Virus record (IMG/VR): IMGVR_UViG_3300045125_000168
Coordinates: 124,001 to 188,000 of that record
DNA length: 64,000 nt
Direction: 5' to 3' (one strand)
Shown: positions 15,912 through 53,826 of the stretch, in pieces
How positions within the stretch are numbered: the first letter of the stretch is position 1
Layout: each line of letters begins with the position of its first letter
The notes under the pieces: model-generated
The model's input: the letters and a program-made list of their open reading frames with translations, nothing else
Database searches by the model: none
What the model was told of the DNA's origin: nothing
Made by a program: the position numbers and the translations under genes

Positions 15912-15979
15912 GGCGGACCTCCCTATTTGGACATGTACATTTAATCTTGGCCGCTTGGTCAATTAAAGGGAAGCACAAT

Positions 15980-16846
15980 ATGCGGAAGGGAATTATTCTA
16001 GCAGGCGGTTCAGGAACACGGCTTCATCCTGTGACCTTGGCGGTGAGCAAACAGCTTCTGCCTGTCTTTGATAAGCCGATGATCTATTACCCTCTGTCTG
16101 TGCTGATGCTCGCAGGTATTCGCGAGATTTGTGTGGTTTCAACGCCTGAGGATCGTGCGGCCTTTCAACGGCTCTTAGGCGACGGCTCGCAGTGGGGTAT
16201 TTCTCTGACATACTTGGTCCAACCAAAACCCGAAGGACTTGCCCAAGCGTTTTTGATTGCGGAAGAGTTTATCGCGGGGCAACCGTCTTGCTTGATTCTG
16301 GGTGATAACCTTTACTTCGGCCATGGCTTAACCAAAGTTCTTAAAAAGACCAACGCTCGGCTAGAAGGGGCCACGGTCTTCGGCTATCTTGTCAAAGACC
16401 CCGAACGCTATGGTGTCGTGGAGTTCGACCGCGAAGGACGAGTGGTGAGCCTTGAAGAAAAACCAGCGCAACCCAAATCCCCGTATGCCGTTACGGGGCT
16501 TTATTTTTACGATGCTCATGCCGTGGAGTACGCCAAGACGTTGAAACCTTCGCCTCGTGGTGAACTGGAGATCACCGATCTCAATCGCATCTACTTAGAA
16601 AAGGGTACTTTGAACGTCGAGACTCTCGGGCGTGGTTATGCATGGCTGGACACAGGCACTCATGAGTCTCTGCTCGAAGCCTCAAATTTTGTCCAAGCCG
16701 TGGAACAGCGGCAGGGATTGAAGATCGCTTGCCCCGAAGAGATCGCCTTTCACCAGGGGTGGATTTCTAAGGAAGCCTTGGACCATGCTGCCGAAAAACT
16801 CAAAAAGAGCACCTATGGGGCTTATCTCAAAAATATGATTATATAG
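15980..16846 (+). CDS. rmlA: Glucose-1-phosphate thymidylyltransferase
   Basis: [42 protein letters not shown]. Confidence 0.97.
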
Positions 16847-20354: not shown

Positions 20355-20710
20355 CTATCATGTTGTTTTTTGACCTCTGATGAAAACACAATAGGTGCAA
20401 GCTAGGGCTTTTAGCCTCGCCCTAAGAGGTCGAAGAGGGTAAACTTCTGACTCCCCATCAAGAACAGGAGCAGACCGATGTGCCCACATGACATCGCACA
20501 ACGTATCAAAGAACTGGTCCTAGCCGAGCAAGGCGAATCAGGCCAAGCTCCTTCCAGTCTTTTTTAGACCAAAAAGAGTTTGAGGTGATGGCTCAGGCTC
20601 TACGCTTGCCGAAAAGCACCCCTTGTATCCGGTGGCCGCTAGAAAATAAGGCCACCGTTGTACTGTACAAAAGAGGCTCCTGAGGATGCGGAACAAACCA
20701 GCCTCGCACA

Positions 20711-22059
20711 TCACCGAAGATTCTCGCCGGAAGCCCCTGGCTTTAGCCATGGGGAGGAAGGCGAGCCTTTCAAATACCTATAGTTATAGCCATCTTTTCT
20801 TTGTGAGACTCTAAAGTACCTATGAGATATTCCTTGTACTCGTCCCTGTCCCGTCGAAATATCAAAAGAACCAGTAGCTCGACAAAGTACCCTTCCTTTG
20901 TGTCTTCCAGCCTTTTTTCCCGAGGGAACTACAGCAATGACCATATCCCCAGTCTCAAAACCAAAGTGCTTTTTCATTGCGGAGCGATGCCTTACTGGGA
21001 AACCATATTTGTTCGTACCACAGAATTGGCGACTCCCGTGACCCGTTGATTTAATCTCAAGAACGTGCATCTCGGGATTGAGCCTAACCTCCGATCCGCT
21101 ACTACCCACACAGGCTGCGTCAATCCAGTGATCTTTTGGGTACTCATTTTTAATCCGATTGAACTTGGTCTGTGCTCCTGTTCCTGTTGAAACAACTAAA
21201 GAAACTTTCTGGAGCCCATTCAAGAGTGCATTTCGTGTTGCATTAACCGCTGCGGTTGAAGCTAGGGATCTTTTAGCCTGAGATAGTATTTTTTCAAGAA
21301 TTTCTGGTTTTTTTGAGAGGAAATCTGCGACAGACTTTGTGCCTTTCGCCTCATTACAAGGACGACAGGAAAGAGTCAGATTGGAAACTCTGTTAGAACC
21401 ACCCTTAGACTTTGGTTTAATATGCTCAACCTCTAAAGGTACATTCTCTGCTTCGCAGTAAACACACCTGCGCCCCCACTTTTCCAATAAATATTCTCGA
21501 ACCTCATATCCTTGAAGAGCCCCTTGTTGATACTCAACCCCTGATACTTCGGGATTCTCCATTTTTTGTGTGTCAAATTTAACTCTCTCAAGAGCTAAGG
21601 ATGCAATAGGAGAAAACTTAGAAAGTCGAGTAACCCAGGTCAGGGTAGTTTGTAGTCGGTGGTCAAGCGAGGGTGGTAGCCAACCTGTAGCCTTTGGACG
21701 ATTGTCAAACCTTGCTTTTCGATACCGTGTTTTTCTGTTTCTCCTCGACCTTCGAAGCTGTCTTCTTGAAAGAAGGCTACCTTTGATTTCTTGCCCCCTA
21801 TGAACAAGGTTCATTGCAAAAGAACTCTGTTCTGCCTCTTATGAATAAGAACCATTCCTGTTGTCTTAGCACCTGGATCAATTTTAGCTTCAAACGGAGC
21901 AGGCTTTCCTGCCTCCGTCCTCTTTAGAATGATAGTAAAGGGAAATTTTCGCAGGATTGCTGCTTTGCCATTTTTCAAAAGTTGTCTGGCACGAGCAGGA
22001 GTACACGGTGTTAAAGGCTTCCGATTAGTATCAAGAACAAAAACACAATTCTGTCTCAA
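20711..22059 (-). CDS. iscB: RNA-guided endonuclease IscB (one frameshift near 21815)
   Basis: PLMP-like KPLTPCTPARAR, RuvC-I IDPG, RRXRR helix, HNH EHIKPKSKGGSN..SNL, RuvC-III HWIDA. Confidence 0.93.
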
Positions 22060-22324
22060 ACCCTTAGAGGGTGCAGCTTTGACGCTGCCTCGCTGTTCTT
22101 TCGAACAGGTGATGTTTGCCTCGCAAATGTCTGAAGAACTTTTGCACAAAAAGGTCCGTCGTATCCCCAAATACGGCAGTGTCCTCTTTTGCAATAGAGC
22201 CAGGAACTGGCAAGCATTCCTGGGTATTATGATTCTTCAAACGTAGTCTCCTTTCAAAGACTAATGCTGGTCATGAACTGGGACTCTTTGACAAGCCCCC
22301 GGCTTTAGCCGTGGGGTTCATGAC
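20711..22324 (-). mobile_element. IS200/IS605-family IscB (OMEGA) element; no tnpA in the window
   Basis: Matching terminal hairpins CCCCACGGCTAAAGCCGGGGG (~22296-22316) and CCCCATGGCTAAAGCCAGGGG (20734-20754) flank the omegaRNA and iscB. Confidence 0.9.
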
Positions 22325-22344
22325 CTGCGAAGAATAGTTTTTGA
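22060..22344 (-). ncRNA. omegaRNA (HEARO-type) scaffold plus 5' guide
   Basis: ~260-nt structured leader GTCA...GACCAGC...GACTACGTT...CCAG...GCTCT...ACATTTGCGAGGCAAAC upstream of iscB. Confidence 0.8.
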
Positions 22345-22538
22345 GTCTGGTGAAATTTTCATCAGTTCAAGAACGATGTTCGTCATGTCCAAGTCCTTGC
22401 CAAAGTGTTTTTTGTGGATCTTTTGCAAGGCTTCGACGCTCTCTTTGACGTAGGGGTCTTTTTCCATAGCGGCCTGCAAATAACTCCAGGCATAACCTTC
22501 CACAGAATTTTTTCTTTGACCTTTGCAAGATAGCTCAT
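22325..22538 (-). pseudogene. 5' half of a leader-bearing gene interrupted by the IscB element; 3' half at ~20593-20712
   Basis: MSYLAKVKEK-SVEG...SKTILR; removing the element can join it to DVRGWFVP...GKRRA*. Confidence 0.55.
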
Positions 22539-22579: not shown

Positions 22580-24577
22580 TCAGGCATAATAGAAGTCCAC
22601 ACCGCCTACGGTCCTCGGATGCTCGATAGCAGATTTTACCGTGCTCCAATCGAGGCCATAATGCACGGCAGCATCCTTGATTGTTTTGAAATACAAGTTC
22701 TCTGAGGTTCGCACGGCCCTTTCCTTGCTCGGCTTCTGCTTGTGCTCCTCAAGCTCATACTGAAACACCACATCCTGCTCTTTTGCCAGAACAGGCTCTT
22801 TATGCGTTAAAGACCAAGTGACGGTGTTCGGATGGATATCATAATGCTCGGCAGCTTCCTTGACCGTCTTGAAATGCAGACCGTTTGAGCAAAAGCACGG
22901 TCTGCACCGAGTCGGGTGATCTCTTTTCTTTCCCTTGAATTTGTGACTCAAGTTGTCCCGCACACTGGAGTCCTGCATCCGTCGTTTTTGTGCCAGAGAC
23001 TTTAAGCTGGGTGCCTTGCCGTTGACCATCTCCCATCGCTCTTTCACATCACTTCGAGTGCGACCATTGAACAACATGCTCAGGTAGCTCTTACTCACAC
23101 CCAACTTCTTCGCAACATCCTCTTGGCTTTGCAACTCTTTAAAAACAAGGTCAAAGGCTTGCAGCAATACCTCGTCTCGGATGAAATTTTTGTCGAGCTT
23201 TTTGTCCTTGATATACTCAGTTGAGACCTCTTTTGCGGTCTTTCCCGTCACGATCGTTGTCACCTGAGTTGGTGTAAGTCCAAGCTCCTGCGCAATCTCG
23301 ATATTTGTCACACCATCTTCATAGCGTTTTTTCAAAACCTGAGAGGCGACATCCAGATCGACTTTTTTGTCGTTGGTGTAGACAAAGGATTTTCCAGTCG
23401 AGGCTTCATATCTGGCCTTGATCTCTGGACGCATTTGTCCATTTAAGACGTACCATACATATTGTTTGGTCACATCTAATTTTTGCGCAATTTCCGTGGC
23501 GGGAAGACCAGAATCATATAGTTCAAAAATCGTTAAGACTTCTTCGTCATTGAGGGTTTTTTGTTTTTCTAAGTCCTGGTTTTCCTCAAGCCATTTTTGA
23601 CGAATTTCAGGTCTTACTCGGCCCCATATTACAGAATTTATTAGATCTCGATTAAGACCTATTTTTTTGCTTATTTCTGCATATTTTAGACCTTGCTTTC
23701 GTAAGTTGAACGCTTCAAACAAAACGTCTTCAGGGATTCTCAATGCGATGTAGTCGGGAGCGTAAGGATCGTTGTAGCCAATTTCTTTGTTTGTTGATTG
23801 GTATTTTCTAATCCAATAATTTTCCCTCTCTGTCAAATCCGCTATAGGTACTCGTTCAATCTCAGAGATACTGCATCGATAATTGCAATTCCGCATAGCT
23901 TCATGAACGGCCATGGTGGAACCATTTCGTGCGGAACTTAAATGACCTTTATATCGGTAATCGATTCCATTGCTCGTTTGCCCGATGTAAACCTTACCGT
24001 TTTCAAATTCAATTTTATAAATAACTCCGTTTGTTTTGTGTTCCCTGTGAAAAACAAATTCAAAGATAGCCTTTCTTGCGTCTATAACTTTGGTCAAGCC
24101 TAAGGTATTCGCATGTTCTGCTTCGCTAACTTCGAGTTTCGTGGCCTCACGCCATACTCTTTTTTTATGAAAGAACTCCCCGTCTTTTTCATAGTGATAG
24201 CTTTGTTTCGCAAAGCCTTTAAAAATGAAGTTATTTCTGAATACGTTCATTTTCTCTGATGTTGAATCCAAGTGAACCAGCAGACCAATTATTGAAGTAT
24301 GTTTTTGAAGGTATTTAAGTACCTTTTGTAAAAAAATCCCTTCAAGGTTCTGTGGCTCAACCCATAGGAGCGATATCTCCAGGTAGGCCGTGCGAAGATA
24401 TTCCGGCTGGTAAGCAGATAACGGCGAAACTAAAAGCACACCAAGAATACGAGAGTCATCCTCGTCCTTCTTTAGGGCGAAGCAGTATTTCACCGTAGAG
24501 GGGATGGTTTGGTGGTTTTCTTCCAGGAGTTTTTTAATGCTTCGGGTGAACGTGACGGATTTTACAAAGTAGCTCAT
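22580..24577 (-). CDS. Homing endonuclease-like fusion: degenerate Mom-like domain, GIY-YIG, and HTH/NUMOD1 repeats
   Basis: GVIYKI...GKVYIGQT...R...ERENYWI...GYN; several HTH repeats; FKTVKEAAEHY and FKTIKDAAVHY. Confidence 0.8.
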   Translation of the reverse strand: MSYFVKSVTFTRSIKKLLEENHQTIPSTVKYCFALKKDEDDSRILGVLLVSPLSAYQPEYLRTAYLEISLLWVEPQNLEGIFLQKVLKYLQKHTSIIGLLVHLDSTSEKMNVFRNNFIFKGFAKQSYHYEKDGEFFHKKRVWREATKLEVSEAEHANTLGLTKVIDARKAIFEFVFHREHKTNGVIYKIEFENGKVYIGQTSNGIDYRYKGHLSSARNGSTMAVHEAMRNCNYRCSISEIERVPIADLTERENYWIRKYQSTNKEIGYNDPYAPDYIALRIPEDVLFEAFNLRKQGLKYAEISKKIGLNRDLINSVIWGRVRPEIRQKWLEENQDLEKQKTLNDEEVLTIFELYDSGLPATEIAQKLDVTKQYVWYVLNGQMRPEIKARYEASTGKSFVYTNDKKVDLDVASQVLKKRYEDGVTNIEIAQELGLTPTQVTTIVTGKTAKEVSTEYIKDKKLDKNFIRDEVLLQAFDLVFKELQSQEDVAKKLGVSKSYLSMLFNGRTRSDVKERWEMVNGKAPSLKSLAQKRRMQDSSVRDNLSHKFKGKKRDHPTRCRPCFCSNGLHFKTVKEAAEHYDIHPNTVTWSLTHKEPVLAKEQDVVFQYELEEHKQKPSKERAVRTSENLYFKTIKDAAVHYGLDWSTVKSAIEHPRTVGGVDFYYA

Positions 24578-28380: not shown

Positions 28381-28463
28381 TGGTGGAAGAGGGGATTGAA
28401 CCACCGAAGACGAAAGTCAACAGGTTTACAGCCTGCCCCCATTGGCCGCTCGGGCACTCTTCC
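28381..28463 (-). tRNA. tRNA-Tyr (GTA) with encoded CCA
   Basis: GGAAGAG acceptor stem, anticodon arm GCAGG-CTGTAAA-CCTGT, long variable arm, GGTTCAA, ends ACCA. Confidence 0.9.
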
Positions 28464-38027: not shown

Positions 38028-40156
38028 TTAATTTTTTCTTTTGATTTTATCCAAAACATCTTGGAGAGAGATGGGCTCGTCAAGCCATGCTTTTTCTTCA
38101 GGTGTGACTTGTTTTCCTTCAAGACTTTTTGGAAATCTCAAATTTCTTCCAGATAATGCTGATGATGTTCGAGTCCCACTCGTTCTCTTGAGCCTTGAGC
38201 CAATAGACGTTGACCATGTTTTTTTGACCGATCCTGTGCGCACGGTCCTCTGCTTATCGGATATCGCTCGGGGTCCAAGGCAGATCATTGAAAACCACTT
38301 TGTCGGCTCGTGTCAGGGTGGCACCGACCGCAAGGCTTTGTCTCGTCGAAACAAACACGCGACCTTCACCCTCTTGAAATCGCTGCTTGACGCTTTCACG
38401 GGCGTCATCGCGCATTTGACCGTGATGTAGCAGCGCGTCATCACCCAGGGCATTTTTGATGTCGATAGCCGCATCCACTGAGTCTGTAAATACCAGGATT
38501 GCCGAGTCTGATGTTTCGATGATCTCTTTCACGAAATCGACTGTCGAAGGGGCCTTGGCTCGTGCGACGTTGGCTTTAAGCCGACTCAGGTCACCAATCG
38601 TGGTGCCCTCTTCAATATCGGGACAATTTGGGACTTCGATATCGATGATGCTTCGCATTTTCTCGGGTAGATCTTTCAAAACCTCTTCTTTGGTTTTTGT
38701 CAGATAGAAATCCTGCATCACACTCCAGGTCAGGCCAATCGTCGCATTTTTAAGTTGTTCTTTAGAGCTAAAGGTTCCAGGACGGATAAGCTCAATTTGG
38801 GTGAAAAGCTCGGATTTTTTATTTTTGATGGCCATTACCGCTCAAGAGAATTTTGTGGGCGAAGAGTTTTTTGACTGAGTAAATCGCACGAGTAATCTGA
38901 GCTTTTTCGTTTTTAATGTAGTGGCTTTCATCGATAATCAACGTGTCGAAACCAGACTTGGCAATCGCAGGCAGGAATTTTTCAAACGAAGCAAAATTAA
39001 CCGTGGCCAGATTGTACCCTGATAGATCAGGCATCCCTTCCTTGCGCAGACGGTCGGGACGCAACTCGACACCTTTGAAGTAACCTGGAAAAAAGCGGTG
39101 AGCCTCTTGAACCCAAGTGCGACGGACCACCTTGGGACACACCACCAGGACGCGCTTACTGTGAGCGGCAACCCAACTCAGAGAGATAAGAGTTTTACCG
39201 AGACCCATCTCAGCACCGATTAAAGCACGGCCTTCGTTTCTTATCTAAAAACCGCACGAACTCGTTTTGGAGAAAGGGAACAGCGTGAATTGATCGGCCA
39301 GTTTTTCCACGACTGCGGGAACAGGTTTTTGTTCTGCTGCAAGAGCTTGGGTCTCTCTTGCTTCGTGTGCAGCAAGATCTTCAACGGCGAACACCCACGA
39401 GGGGACAATCTTGCGGGCTTTTTCAACGGCCTCTTTTGCGACGGCAAGACTGGTCGTCTCACGACTCCAATCCTCGGTGTTGACGAGGAAAATACCGGAG
39501 AGTTGGCCTGACTTGTTGCTAAAAAGTTGGTTGAGTTCTTGGTTGAAACTCCAACGAAAAACAAACGCCTTTTTCTCGGGCATATAGCGCGAACAAAAAA
39601 GGTTACGTCCTCGTTTCTGGTCGAGGAGACTCCAAAGCATATTCAGGCGACATCTCGCGGCTCGCTGGAGAAGTCGCAGGGGCAGGCGCGACCACAGGCA
39701 ACTCACCCACCACTTCGATCTCCAAGTCCGACATTTTAGAGCGGAAGCTTTCTAGGTCAAACGAGGGAATTTCATCACGGTAAACGATGCAACAGCCTAG
39801 CTCAGGCTTGTAGTGCATCCCGAACTCTCTTTGCGTTGCTTTAAACTCGTTAAAATGTTCTGTGCGACCGATCAGACGAAAAGCCACATAGTCTGAATCA
39901 GTGACGATCTCCAATCTTGTATCATGTATCAGGGCAAATTCAGTGACAACCTCGAAGGCTTCGCCAAAACGCGAGGAGAGTTGACGACGGTATTTTTTTA
40001 AGACGTCTGCCATATAGTTTGGATTATTGCGCACGGACAACCAACGATCTTTGTCTATACGATTGAAGCCCGCATCGTTGCGCTCTTTGACATTATCGAT
40101 AGAGTAGAGGTAGTCGCCCATTTGTGTGTAAGAATGTTGATTTTCTCATGCATCAT
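38028..40156 (-). CDS. SNF2-family helicase/annealing helicase (frameshifted)
   Basis: EMGLGKT, IIDESH, LLSG, VGATLTRA, DLPWTPSD; N-terminal NDAGFNRID. Confidence 0.85.
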
Positions 40157-52417: not shown

Positions 52418-52945
52418 CTAAATCTTGATGAGAGGCCAACTCTGATCGCGGGGATTGACTAAGAGAGGAGTCTCAGGCCATTCGATACCAAGCGCAGGGT
52501 CATCCCACCGGAGACCGTCTTCGGCACTTTTTTCATAAGGGTAATCGACTTTGTACTGAACGATCGCCGTTTCAGACAGAACTAGAAAGCCGTGGGCCAA
52601 ACCTTTGGGGACATAAAGACTCCAGTGGTTGTCCTCATTAAGATGAAACCCAGCCCATTTCAGATAGCTCGGGGAGTCAGGTCGAAGGTCCACAATCACG
52701 TCATAGATGGAACCCGCAACACACCGCACGAGTTTCGCCTGAGCCGATCCACCTTTTTGAAAGTGCAAGCCTCGCAAGGTGCCTTTCATGCTTTTGGACT
52801 GATTGTCTTGAATCCATCTCTCGTGGATGCCTGCGGAGCGGAAGTCTGACAGATTGTACGGGACCAAAAAATGTCCTCGGTCATCCGAAAAAACATCAGG
52901 CTTAAAGATGCAGGCTTGATAGACAGAAGTTGTCAACTTTTCCAC
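52418..52945 (-). CDS. rmlC: dTDP-4-dehydrorhamnose 3,5-epimerase
   Basis: DDRGHF, QDNQSKS, LRGLHFQ, QAKLVRC, GLAHGF. Confidence 0.95.
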   Translation of the reverse strand: MEKLTTSVYQACIFKPDVFSDDRGHFLVPYNLSDFRSAGIHERWIQDNQSKSMKGTLRGLHFQKGGSAQAKLVRCVAGSIYDVIVDLRPDSPSYLKWAGFHLNEDNHWSLYVPKGLAHGFLVLSETAIVQYKVDYPYEKSAEDGLRWDDPALGIEWPETPLLVNPRDQSWPLIKI

Positions 52946-53826
52946 AAGCGACCCTTTTCTTGGAGTTCCTCTAAGTGTTCGACTAACCTAATCTTCCAAT
53001 CGACGATATGCTGCGGAGCTAGGGCTTGTGCCTTGGTGGTGTCCAGGGCCGAGAAGGTCGGACGCAAGGCGCGGGCGCGGTGCTCATCACTACTTAAAAA
53101 CGGCTTGACTTTCAGATCGATATTCACCACGGCACTGAGATAGGACGCAATCACCTGAGCCTGATCGCAGCGCGAGGGCACCGTCGTCGCAGAACCCGAA
53201 ACATGGATTAGACCCCGAAGCCGAGCGTCACTGAGCGCCTGGACAATAAAGCCTGCGACATCCTGAGCGTGAGTTGGAAAGCCAAATTGATCGGATACCA
53301 CGGGTATAGAGTTTGAGTTCTTTAAATTGCGGACAATCGCTTCCGGGAACGACGCCCGTGCTCGACCGTACACCCAACTGGTGCGCACCAAAAGAAAAGG
53401 TTTTAAACAGTGCCTGAGAAATAGCTCTTCCCCGAGTAATTTGGTCAGACCATAGACCTGAATCGGCCCCGCTTGGTCGTCCTCACGGTAAGGGATGTGG
53501 TGCTCTTTGCCACCAAAGATATAGTCCGTCGAGATATGCACCACGAGCTTACAGGCTTGAAGCTCCGAACAGACCTTGGCTACCCGTTCGGCAAGAGCCG
53601 CGTTGAGTAGGAAGGCTTGGTGCAAATGCTGCTCGGCCTGATCGACGTTGGTGTAGGCCGCAGCATTGATGACCACTTCAGGGTTCACCGACCGCAGATA
53701 GAACTCCAGGGCCTCTAGGTTCGAGAGGTCACACTCCTGTCTCGTGGGGGCTAAGACAGGGTAGCCGTGCAAAAGTCGCCTAAGCTCCGTGCCGATCAGC
53801 CCTGAGCCACCCAGAATCACGATCAT
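52933..53826 (-). CDS. rmlD: dTDP-4-dehydrorhamnose reductase
   Basis: GGSGLIG, NAAAYTNVD, HISTDYIF, YGLTKLLGE, RTSWVY. Confidence 0.95.
   Translation of the reverse strand: MIVILGGSGLIGTELRRLLHGYPVLAPTRQECDLSNLEALEFYLRSVNPEVVINAAAYTNVDQAEQHLHQAFLLNAALAERVAKVCSELQACKLVVHISTDYIFGGKEHHIPYREDDQAGPIQVYGLTKLLGEELFLRHCLKPFLLVRTSWVYGRARASFPEAIVRNLKNSNSIPVVSDQFGFPTHAQDVAGFIVQALSDARLRGLIHVSGSATTVPSRCDQAQVIASYLSAVVNIDLKVKPFLSSDEHRARALRPTFSALDTTKAQALAPQHIVDWKIRLVEHLEELQEKGRLWKS

What the first reader, a model, noticed from the sequence alone, without database searches (positions are those of the whole stretch)
20593..22538. IscB/omegaRNA element inserted in a tagged cargo gene, with guide and TAM readable
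The element has twin terminal hairpins and begins GTCA right after ...AAAAACTATTCTTCGCAG. It ends at ...CTTCGGTGA-TGTGCG. IscB guides derive from the 5' flank and the TAM lies at the other junction, so the predicted target is the empty allele followed by a (G)TGA-like TAM. One junction choice gives CGC AGT GAT GTG, restoring ...TILRSDVRGWF...RRA*; there is a 1-nt ambiguity, and the alternative gives a stop. With no tnpA here, the element may spread by RNA-guided homing between co-infecting phages.
Basis: partly seen in the sequence, partly recalled or inferred. Interest (0 to 1): 0.6.

Follow-up and report, generated by a model that had tools for sequence, protein, structure and literature searches.

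The report
IscB guide-RNA transposon in a phage

Summary
The element is real. It is a non-autonomous ISC/IS200-IS605-type transposon on the minus strand, at 20715-22324. It holds a HEARO/omegaRNA (127.7 bits against a cut-off of 83), an IscB gene and twin subterminal hairpins. A 98%-identical sibling copy in a freshwater metagenome matches 20711-22324 and then runs into unrelated flanks, so both ends are mapped.

An orthologous locus without the element (L085) joins the two window flanks directly: ...TATTCTTGG|GTGATGTGCG.... The ortholog's gene stops at that TGA. The empty allele therefore reads ...TILRR*.

The guide is AAACTATTCTTCGCAG (22340-22325) and the TAM is GTGA (20714-20711). Relatives show the same RTGA rule, as does published work on ISC elements.

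The held 236-kb record has no tnpA. iscB is broken by a one-base loss in a T5 run. The sibling is intact there, and the two copies differ by 12 synonymous and 5 non-synonymous changes. The phage's own reads were not available, and at least two other genes in the window are also broken, so real decay and assembly error cannot be separated.

This is an ordinary member of a known family in a less usual host. Homing between phages remains untested.

The parts
20715..22324 (-). The transposon proper (1,610 bp). iscB and the omegaRNA read on the minus strand. The TnpA-defined top strand is the window's + strand, with the left end (LE) at 20715 and the right end (RE) at 22324.
   Evidence: A sibling contig in run X1 matches 20711-22324 at about 98% and then runs into unlike flanks on both sides. 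The empty-site ortholog assigns GTGA 20714-20711 to the target.
22109..22324 (-). omegaRNA scaffold (Rfam HEARO RF02033, model positions 1-211). The true 3' end probably runs on towards the iscB start.
   Evidence: 127.7 bits against a gathering score of 83, E 4e-26. All 20 relatives tested have the same RNA upstream of iscB.
22325..22340 (-). Predicted 16-nt guide AAACTATTCTTCGCAG. It is the last 16 nt of the host gene's coding sequence, just outside the RE.
   Evidence: Position relative to the HEARO start and the published geometry. Its only perfect match in the 236-kb record is this locus, where it is followed by GTCATG rather than a TAM. The 16-nt length is assumed from characterised IscBs.
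20711..20714 (-). TAM / target motif GTGA (TCAC on the + strand). Its TGA is the natural stop of the host gene in the empty allele. In the occupied allele it is the stop codon used by iscB.
   Evidence: Likeness to the sibling ends here. L085 has GTGATGTGCG directly after the 5' flank. Relatives' ends are followed by GTGA or ATGA, after which copies diverge. Kapitonov 2016 reports the targets GT|GA and N|ATGA.
21814..22059 (-). iscB N-terminal piece (PLMP domain and RuvC-I, ...KIDPGAKTTG...). The probable start is TTG at 22059.
   Evidence: Pfam RRXRR positions 1-73; OgeuIscB residues 4-74; alignment with relatives.
20711..21814 (-). iscB C-terminal piece (bridge helix RRxRR, RuvC-II, HNH, RuvC-III, TAM-interacting domain). 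It has no stop of its own: it reads through the LE hairpin to the TGA of the TAM.
   Evidence: Pfam RRXRR 78-174 plus HNH; solved IscB structures. Stop positions compared with relatives, most of which stop at DGYxYxF* before the hairpin.
21815..21822 (-). Frameshift site: a run of four T (A4 at 21818-21821 on the + strand) where the sibling has five.
   Evidence: The sibling has an extra A behind 21817 and 21822 G>T, giving ...RQNRVIFAMNLVHRG..., which matches relatives such as L016 (...IVFAMELEHRG).
22296..22316 (+). RE subterminal imperfect hairpin CCCCCGGCTTTAGCCGTGGGG, 8 nt from the RE cleavage point (...TTCATGAC|). It also forms part of the first omegaRNA stem-loop region.
20734..20754 (+). 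LE subterminal imperfect hairpin CCCCTGGCTTTAGCCATGGGG, 19 nt from the proposed LE cleavage point (TCAC|).
   Evidence: Relatives carry their own matching pair of hairpins at both ends.
22318..22538 (-). Host small gene. ATG 22538 with RBS GAGGGG opens one frame. The conserved ...EGYAWSYL...TILRRS* frame (22503..22318) is reached only if the run at 22508-22513 has one more base.
   Evidence: Ortholog P0002 reads MSYLVRVKEKNPIEGYAGSYL...SKSILG* in one frame, with a run of seven A where the window has six.
22580..24577 (-). Neighbouring free-standing GIY-YIG endonuclease-like gene with many HTH repeats (context, not part of the element).
   Evidence: Pfam and PHROG hits. 84% identical and syntenic in the element-free locus L085.

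Best explanation
This is a non-autonomous ISC2-type transposon of the IS200/IS605 superfamily, 1,610 bp at 20715-22324. It carries an IscB nuclease gene and its omegaRNA (HEARO), and it sits in a large phage-like genome.

It inserted without target duplication directly 5' (in iscB sense) of a GTGA motif whose TGA is the stop codon of a small phage gene. The gene product changes only from ...RR* to ...RRS*.

The element lies in the same orientation as that gene, so read-through transcription can supply an omegaRNA whose first 16 nt (AAACTATTCTTCGCAG) are the end of the host gene. An IscB-omegaRNA complex would recognise that sequence only when it is followed by GTGA, that is, the empty allele. 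In the occupied allele it is followed by the element's own GTCA. The complex would cut the empty allele, and repair from an occupied copy would reinstall the element.

Arrival at this site, and at the sibling's different site, needs a Y1 TnpA supplied in trans; none is in the record.

Shown here: identity, ends, empty site and the TAM motif. Inferred: transcription, cleavage and homing.

As assembled, iscB is split by a one-base deletion in a T5 run. Either the copy has only just died, or the assembly is wrong at that run.
For: - HEARO at 127.7 bits against a cut-off of 83.
- IscB domains and hits to solved IscB structures in both pieces, with motifs aligned to relatives.
- Twin hairpins, which co-vary as pairs in relatives.
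- The sibling copy ends exactly at 22324 and 20711, with unlike flanks beyond.
- Syntenic element-free ortholog L085: the upstream GIY-YIG gene is 84% identical, the small gene 76% identical, and the flanks are joined as ...TTCTTGG|GTGATGTGCG with the stop at that TGA.
- RTGA follows the 3' end in 14 relatives, after which copies diverge.
- Published targets are GT|GA and N|ATGA with a 5'-GTCA terminus. The omegaRNA is bounded by the RE, the TAM lies beside the LE, the GstIscB TAM is TTCAT (ATGAA in iscB sense), only about 1.5% of iscB genes lie near tnpA, and insertions tend to share the orientation of the upstream gene.
- 12 synonymous against 5 non-synonymous differences between the two copies, spread over both ORF pieces.
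- The guide has a single perfect match in the record, beside GTCA rather than a TAM.
Against: - iscB is not one open frame as assembled.
- The frameshift could not be checked in the phage's own reads: runs X1-X3 do not show the phage flanks.
- No RNA data, and no promoter above chance.
- The only empty-site ortholog is a diverged relative with a 3-nt difference next to the TAM. It shows where the element sits but is not itself a target of this guide.
- Whether the G at 20714 is target or element rests on frame conservation with the ortholog and on published empty sites of related elements, not on an identical empty allele.
Confidence: 0.8

Rival explanations
1. One reading: the element interrupts a longer gene, and excision (junction CGCAG|TGATGTG) restores ...TILRSDVRGWF...RRA*, ending at 20593.
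For: That junction gives an open frame of about 43 further codons (reading). The one-G ambiguity is real at the sequence level, because the 5' flank also ends in G.
Against: - The ortholog's gene stops at the TGA of GTGATGTGCG (...SKSILG*), and similarity to the window is lost about 10 nt after it.
- The sibling shows that the element starts at GTCA, not GGTCA.
- Related elements keep a complete 4-nt RTGA in the empty site.
- The GstIscB TAM includes the base before TGA.
Confidence: 0.05
2. Inert relic: the frameshift is real, no transposase is at hand, and the element is a dead passenger that will decay. The guide and TAM are then only historical marks.
For: - iscB is in two frames.
- No tnpA in the record.
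- Other genes in the window are also broken: the host small gene and an SNF2-type helicase with a frameshift and an in-frame TAA. This fits a decaying, possibly integrated ('provirus') genome.
Against: - There is only one lesion. All catalytic motifs, both hairpins and the omegaRNA are intact.
- The 12:5 ratio of synonymous to non-synonymous changes against a 98% sibling means selection acted until very recently.
- The iscB lesion and the host small-gene lesion are single-base losses in A/T runs, which is the typical long-read consensus error. The source contig name (Ga0494335_066, 351,605 bp) hints at a long-read assembly, which is my inference.
Confidence: 0.4
3. Phage weapon rather than selfish element: the phage keeps IscB/omegaRNA to cut competing related phages at this locus during co-infection (marker exclusion), next to its GIY-YIG endonuclease, whether or not the element is copied.
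For: - The element lies in an endonuclease-rich spot, directly downstream of a free-standing GIY-YIG gene.
- Homing and competitor killing by phage endonucleases are documented for protein-guided enzymes, and the idea has been extended in theory to OMEGA systems.
- IscB elements are shared among co-circulating Ralstonia phages.
Against: There is no evidence of activity. The one relative found has a diverged target that this guide would not match. The guide is simply whatever flanks the insertion, as in every ISC element, so nothing points to selection for a defensive target.
Confidence: 0.1

Closest known systems
ISC2 transposons (IscB-encoding members of the IS200/IS605 superfamily; Kapitonov, Makarova & Koonin 2016, PMC4810608)
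   Same: About 1.3-1.7 kb and encoding only IscB. 5'-GTCA terminus, subterminal imperfect hairpins, no target duplication, target GT|GA or N|ATGA, and usually non-autonomous.
   Different: The host here is a large phage-like genome. This copy's iscB has no stop of its own and uses the TGA of the target, and it is frameshifted as assembled.
Geobacillus stearothermophilus ISGst IscB element (Meers et al. 2023, 10.1101/2023.03.14.532601)
   Same: omegaRNA upstream of iscB and bounded by the RE, guide from the flank, TAM beside the LE shared by TnpA and IscB, and the donor joint as the target. The TAM TTCAT (ATGAA in iscB sense) resembles GTGA(T) here.
   Different: In Geobacillus a TnpA is present in the genome and activity was shown. 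Here there is no TnpA in the record and nothing has been assayed. The TAM has G instead of A at the first position.
OgeuIscB and other solved IscB-omegaRNA complexes (PDB 7xht, 7utn, 9k30 TbaIscB)
   Same: The same domain order. The N piece aligns to OgeuIscB residues 4-74 and the C piece to 145-351.
   Different: Similarity is distant (E 1e-18 to 1e-28). No structure or activity is known for this clade. Its nearest relatives (55-62% identity) are in filamentous cyanobacteria.
IscB/HEARO elements in cultured phages (Ralstonia phages Heva and Adzire, Microcoleus and Nodularia phages)
   Same: IscB 51-55% identical, HEARO upstream, ATGA next to the 3' end, annotated only as 'HNH endonuclease' or hypothetical.
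   Different: Those copies are intact single ORFs. One element is 99% identical across two unrelated phage genera.

Membership tests
ISC / IscB-omegaRNA (OMEGA) transposon | IscB protein: PLMP/RRXRR N-terminus, RuvC split by an arginine-rich helix and an HNH insert, and a C-terminal TAM-interacting domain | tested here: met
   Pfam RRXRR 1-73 and 78-174 plus HNH. Solved IscB structures are hit by both pieces. The motifs DPGAKTTG, ERVKFD, VEHIKP...CRPCN and DHWIDAACVG align with relatives.
ISC / IscB-omegaRNA (OMEGA) transposon | iscB is a single intact open reading frame | tested here: not met
   Two frames as assembled, caused by a one-base loss in a T run at 21818-21821. The sibling is intact there. 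Whether this is real or an assembly error is open.
ISC / IscB-omegaRNA (OMEGA) transposon | HEARO-type omegaRNA directly upstream of iscB on the same strand, beginning at the element end | tested here: met
   RF02033 at 127.7 bits (cut-off 83), full model, start at 22324.
ISC / IscB-omegaRNA (OMEGA) transposon | Subterminal imperfect hairpins at both ends, in direct orientation (Y1 transposase binding sites) | tested here: met
   20731-20754 and 22293-22316 are 92% identical; both fold with a bulge.
ISC / IscB-omegaRNA (OMEGA) transposon | Site-specific insertion at a 4-5-nt motif with no target-site duplication, shown by an empty site | tested here: met
   The L085 ortholog joins the flanks at GTGA. 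The sibling's ends are at 20711 and 22324. The RTGA rule holds in relatives.
ISC / IscB-omegaRNA (OMEGA) transposon | Y1 TnpA in cis (autonomous element) | tested here: not met
   No PF01797 hit in the 236-kb record. This is the usual state: about 98.5% of iscB genes lack a nearby tnpA. It makes the element non-autonomous, not a non-member.
ISC / IscB-omegaRNA (OMEGA) transposon | RNA-guided, TAM-dependent double-strand cleavage of the empty site | not testable with these tools
   Needs expression and a cleavage or TAM-library assay.
Homing element spreading between co-infecting phages | Presence/absence polymorphism at the same site among near-identical phages, with the empty allele matching guide plus TAM | tested here: inconclusive
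   Only one element-free relative was found, with gene identities of 76-84%. Its site has the TAM but differs from the guide by a 3-nt indel next to the TAM. No joints were seen in the runs laid, and there were no other alleles in viral contigs.

The most novel reading that the evidence does not exclude
The element is, or was until a very recent one-base slip, an active TnpA-independent, RNA-guided gene drive among co-infecting large (probably cyano-) phages. Read-through from the small phage gene would make the omegaRNA. IscB would cut element-free alleles at the gene's stop codon, and phage recombination would copy the element in. This 'non-restorative homing' has so far been proposed only in theory for phages.
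Probability: 0.15. Interest if true: 0.65.

Novelty: new member of a known kind. Interest (0 to 1): 0.3.

Why it matters
IscB/omegaRNA elements are the ancestors of Cas9, and their natural role has been shown only in bacterial chromosomes and plasmids. A copy in a large phage whose ends, guide, TAM and empty site can all be read from sequence is a clean natural example. It also shows that such elements travel with phages, where co-infection would let an RNA-guided nuclease act like a classical phage homing endonuclease.

In itself the element follows the published rules of its family, so the value is mainly as an example and as a pointer. The pointer is to the cultured Ralstonia phages noticed in passing, where phage-to-phage homing could be tested at the bench.

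Tried and rejected
- **Relatives in IMG/VR.** Searches with the small host gene, the 357-aa neighbour and a conserved DNA pattern of the host gene found none. Megablast of the region against GenBank phages found no match.
- **Reads.** Only one run (X1) held any of the region, and what it held was a sibling copy elsewhere, not the phage. No joint or empty-site read turned up, and the frameshift could not be verified in the phage itself. Both read tools are now at their caps.
- **Sibling's flanks.** They are not present in this phage record.
- **'RTGA TAM targets stop codons' as a general rule.** On 21 elements, 4 have at least 40 open codons upstream in the TGA frame, against 2 and 5 in the other two frames. 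There is no trend, so the idea was dropped.
- **Alternative genetic code.** Reading any one stop codon as sense raises ORF cover, as it must, and none stands out. The iscB break is a frame change, not a stop. Not pursued.
- **Programmed frameshift.** Rejected: relatives and the sibling are in a single frame, and the site is not a slippery heptamer.
- **Promoter and terminator scan.** Counts do not exceed those from shuffled sequence.
- **Hairpin folding energies.** They are unremarkable against shuffles (z -1.2 to -1.6). The case for the hairpins rests on their duplication and on family-wide pairing, not on energy.
- **Heva/Cimandef as a scarless empty site.** Not quite: Cimandef has 25 extra nt between two ATGA motifs.

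Full report
**What is there.** The window is bases 124001-188000 of a 236,430-bp IMG/VR virus record. IMG/VR classes it as a 'provirus' and estimates it 87% complete. Other ORFs in the window hit head-decoration, virion-structural and tail-fibre PHROGs, and most have no Pfam family, so a large phage is a reasonable reading.

On the minus strand, Rfam's HEARO model (the IscB omegaRNA) matches 22324..22109 over its full length at 127.7 bits, against a gathering score of 83. It is the only copy in the record.

Downstream lie two ORFs in different frames:
- The N-terminal piece runs down to 21814 from a probable TTG start at 22059; it matches Pfam RRXRR positions 1-73.
- 21814..20711, matching RRXRR positions 78-174 plus HNH.

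Both pieces hit solved IscB structures. The N piece aligns to OgeuIscB residues 4-74 and the C piece to 145-351. Aligned with six relatives, the two pieces cover the whole protein, with the RuvC-I, RuvC-II, HNH and RuvC-III motifs in place. The only defect is a frame change between ...HKRQNRV and MNLVHRG....

The 'twin hairpins' are a 24-nt direct repeat, 92% identical, at 20731-20754 and 22293-22316. The motif is otherwise absent from the window beyond two weak matches. Each copy folds as an imperfect hairpin with a bulge.

**Ends of the element.** One public freshwater metagenome run holds an 1,844-bp contig that matches window 20711-22324 with 21 substitutions and a few indels. On both sides it continues into sequence unlike the window. 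This is a sibling copy at another site, and it maps the ends:
- The RE ends ...TTCATGAC at 22324. This is GTCA..., the HEARO start, on the iscB strand.
- Likeness at the other end stops at TCAC, 20711-20714.

All 20 relatives examined also begin with GTCA (one has ATCA) at the HEARO start. Many carry their own matched pair of hairpins at both ends.

**The empty site.** The 61-aa ORF that ends at the element (22503..22318) has a 76%-identical homolog, P0002, on a 1,286-bp ENA contig (L085). L085 is syntenic. Its upstream gene is 84% identical to the C-terminal half of the window's GIY-YIG protein and ends at the same residue.

- L085 reads ...CCAGAATCAAAAAGTATTCTTGG|GTGATGTGCGTTGAGG....
- The window reads ...CCAGACTCAAAAACTATTCTTCGCAG, then the element, then GTGATGTGCGAGGCTGG....

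So the two window flanks are contiguous in a relative that lacks the element.

The homolog's ORF stops at that TGA (...SKSILG*). With the G at 20714 assigned to the target, the window's empty allele reads ...ATT CTT CGC AGG TGA (TILRR*). That is one codon longer than the ortholog and stops at the same place. The occupied allele reads ...CGC AGG TCA TGA (RRS*).

It also conflicts with three other lines of evidence:
- the sibling's start at GTCA;
- published empty sites of ISC elements, whose targets are GT|GA or N|ATGA, with the whole 4-mer kept in the empty site;
- the experimentally defined GstIscB TAM, TTCAT, which is ATGAA in iscB sense and so includes the base before TGA.

I put about 0.85 on the stop-codon junction.

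**TAM.** In relatives that occur as several similar copies, likeness between copies ends at the following motifs, after which the flanks diverge:
- ...cGTGA in L007, L008, L011 and L014;
- ...tcATGA in L010, L015, L018, L019, L020 and L027;
- ...GATGA in L022, L024 and L030.

The motif lies roughly 19-25 nt past the hairpin foot (19 nt in the window, as in IS608 by my recollection).

On the TnpA top strand the window has ATCAC| at the LE flank and ATGAC| at the RE end. These differ by one base, which fits cleavage after AC at both ends. It also means IscB must tell GTGA (empty site) from GTCA (occupied site).

The predicted guide has one perfect match in the record, at its own locus next to GTCA.

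**Mechanism.** Meers et al. state that the omegaRNA upstream of iscB is bounded by the transposon RE, and that the TAM lies 5' of the LE and is shared by TnpA and IscB. They also state that the donor joint is the nuclease's target, that only about 1.5% of iscB genes have a tnpA nearby, and that IscB elements tend to share the orientation of the upstream gene. The window fits each point, including orientation: host gene and element are both on the minus strand.

The record has no Y1 transposase. The sibling at a different site therefore implies mobilisation in trans.

The nearest IscB relatives (55-62% identity) are almost all in filamentous cyanobacteria and in Microcoleus and Nodularia phages. 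This suggests a cyanobacterial host, though that is inference only.

Homing into co-infecting phages is listed as a theoretical possibility in a 2026 review. That review cites experimental support only for a TnpB drive in plasmids. Nothing here tests it.

**The frameshift.** The sibling has one more A behind 21817 (five instead of four) and G>T at 21822. This gives ...RQNRVIFAMNLVHRG..., in a single frame and like the relatives.

Of 17 coding differences between the two copies, 12 are synonymous and they lie in both pieces. Selection on the whole protein therefore lasted until very recently.

The phage flanks were not seen in the runs available, so the lesion is unverified in the phage itself.

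Two observations cut both ways:
- The host small gene is also shifted by one base in an A run relative to its ortholog (six A against seven).
- An SNF2-type helicase at 38254-39208 is split by a frameshift and has an in-frame TAA where motif VI expects Q.

Against that, RmlA, RmlC, RmlD, a NUDIX protein and the 665-aa GIY-YIG protein are full length.

The two nearby single-base losses in A/T runs (host gene, iscB) look like long-read consensus errors. The source contig's name and size fit such an assembly, but that is my inference. A decaying integrated phage would give the same picture. I leave it at roughly even odds.

**Verdict.** The element is a textbook ISC/IscB-omegaRNA transposon whose ends, guide, TAM and empty site can all be read. 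It is a new member of a known kind.

Noticed in passing
window 20711-20790 (-): iscB has no stop codon of its own. It reads about 25 codons past the usual ...DGYxYxF end, through the LE hairpin, and stops at the TGA of the target motif. The sibling's 3-nt insertion in the hairpin keeps that frame. Most relatives stop before the hairpin, and three stop in its loop.
   Followed up: partly
window 22508-22513 (T6 on the + strand): The host small gene is itself frameshifted. ATG 22538 with RBS GAGGGG opens a frame that stops at 22383. The conserved frame is reached only with one more base in this run, as in ortholog L085 (A7; MSYLVRVKEKNPIEGY...).
   Followed up: yes
window 38254-39208 (-): An SNF2/ResIII-type helicase is in pieces. 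There is a frameshift near 38820-38835 (...ILLSGNGHQK* against AIKNKKSELFTQIELIRPGTF in another frame). There is also an in-frame TAA at 38254-38256 where motif VI expects Q (...DIR*AEDRAHRIGQKN). This could be decay, assembly error or something else.
   Followed up: partly
L087 (Ralstonia phage Heva NC_054960), L088 (Adzire NC_054462), L089 (Cimandef NC_054956): One IscB/HEARO element of about 1.7 kb, 99% identical, sits in two unrelated genera of cultured Ralstonia phages, annotated only as 'HNH endonuclease'. Heva's 98.9%-identical relative Cimandef lacks it. At that place Cimandef has Heva's 5'-flank sequence followed directly by ATGA, plus 25 nt that Heva lacks, and a solo ISC-like end hairpin just upstream. 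In all, 19 of 50,697 GenBank phage records have an IscB hit.
   Followed up: partly
L004 4276-4438 (IMGVR_UViG_3300025390_000524): A viral contig with an IscB 50% identical to the window's has a second HEARO hit (118 bits, 163 nt) directly downstream of iscB with no second iscB after it. This may be an ORF-less tandem element.
   Followed up: no
window 22580-24577 (-): A free-standing GIY-YIG endonuclease-like gene (665 aa) with many HTH/NUMOD-like repeats lies directly upstream of the small gene. The pair is syntenic in L085, so this stretch is an endonuclease-rich spot.
   Followed up: partly
window 22057-22059 (-): The only canonical in-frame start close to the PLMP domain is TTG at 22059, and the sibling copy has TTA there. 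Either the sibling starts elsewhere or that copy has lost its start. Most relatives use ATG (MSNxVFVLD) and one uses TTG.
   Followed up: partly
window 15947-16846 (+), 52418-53826 (-): Full-length dTDP-rhamnose pathway genes (RmlA, RmlC, RmlD) and a NUDIX gene sit in a phage-like genome.
   Followed up: no
window 20400-20432 (+): A weak third hairpin, gcaagctagggcttttagcctcgccctaagagg, resembles the element's end hairpins (GGCTTTTAGCC core) about 300 nt beyond the LE. It may be a remnant of an earlier insertion or chance (reading).
   Followed up: no
window 28384-28463 (-): A tRNA-like gene with a long extra arm scores only just above the Rfam threshold (33.5 against 29 bits).
   Followed up: no
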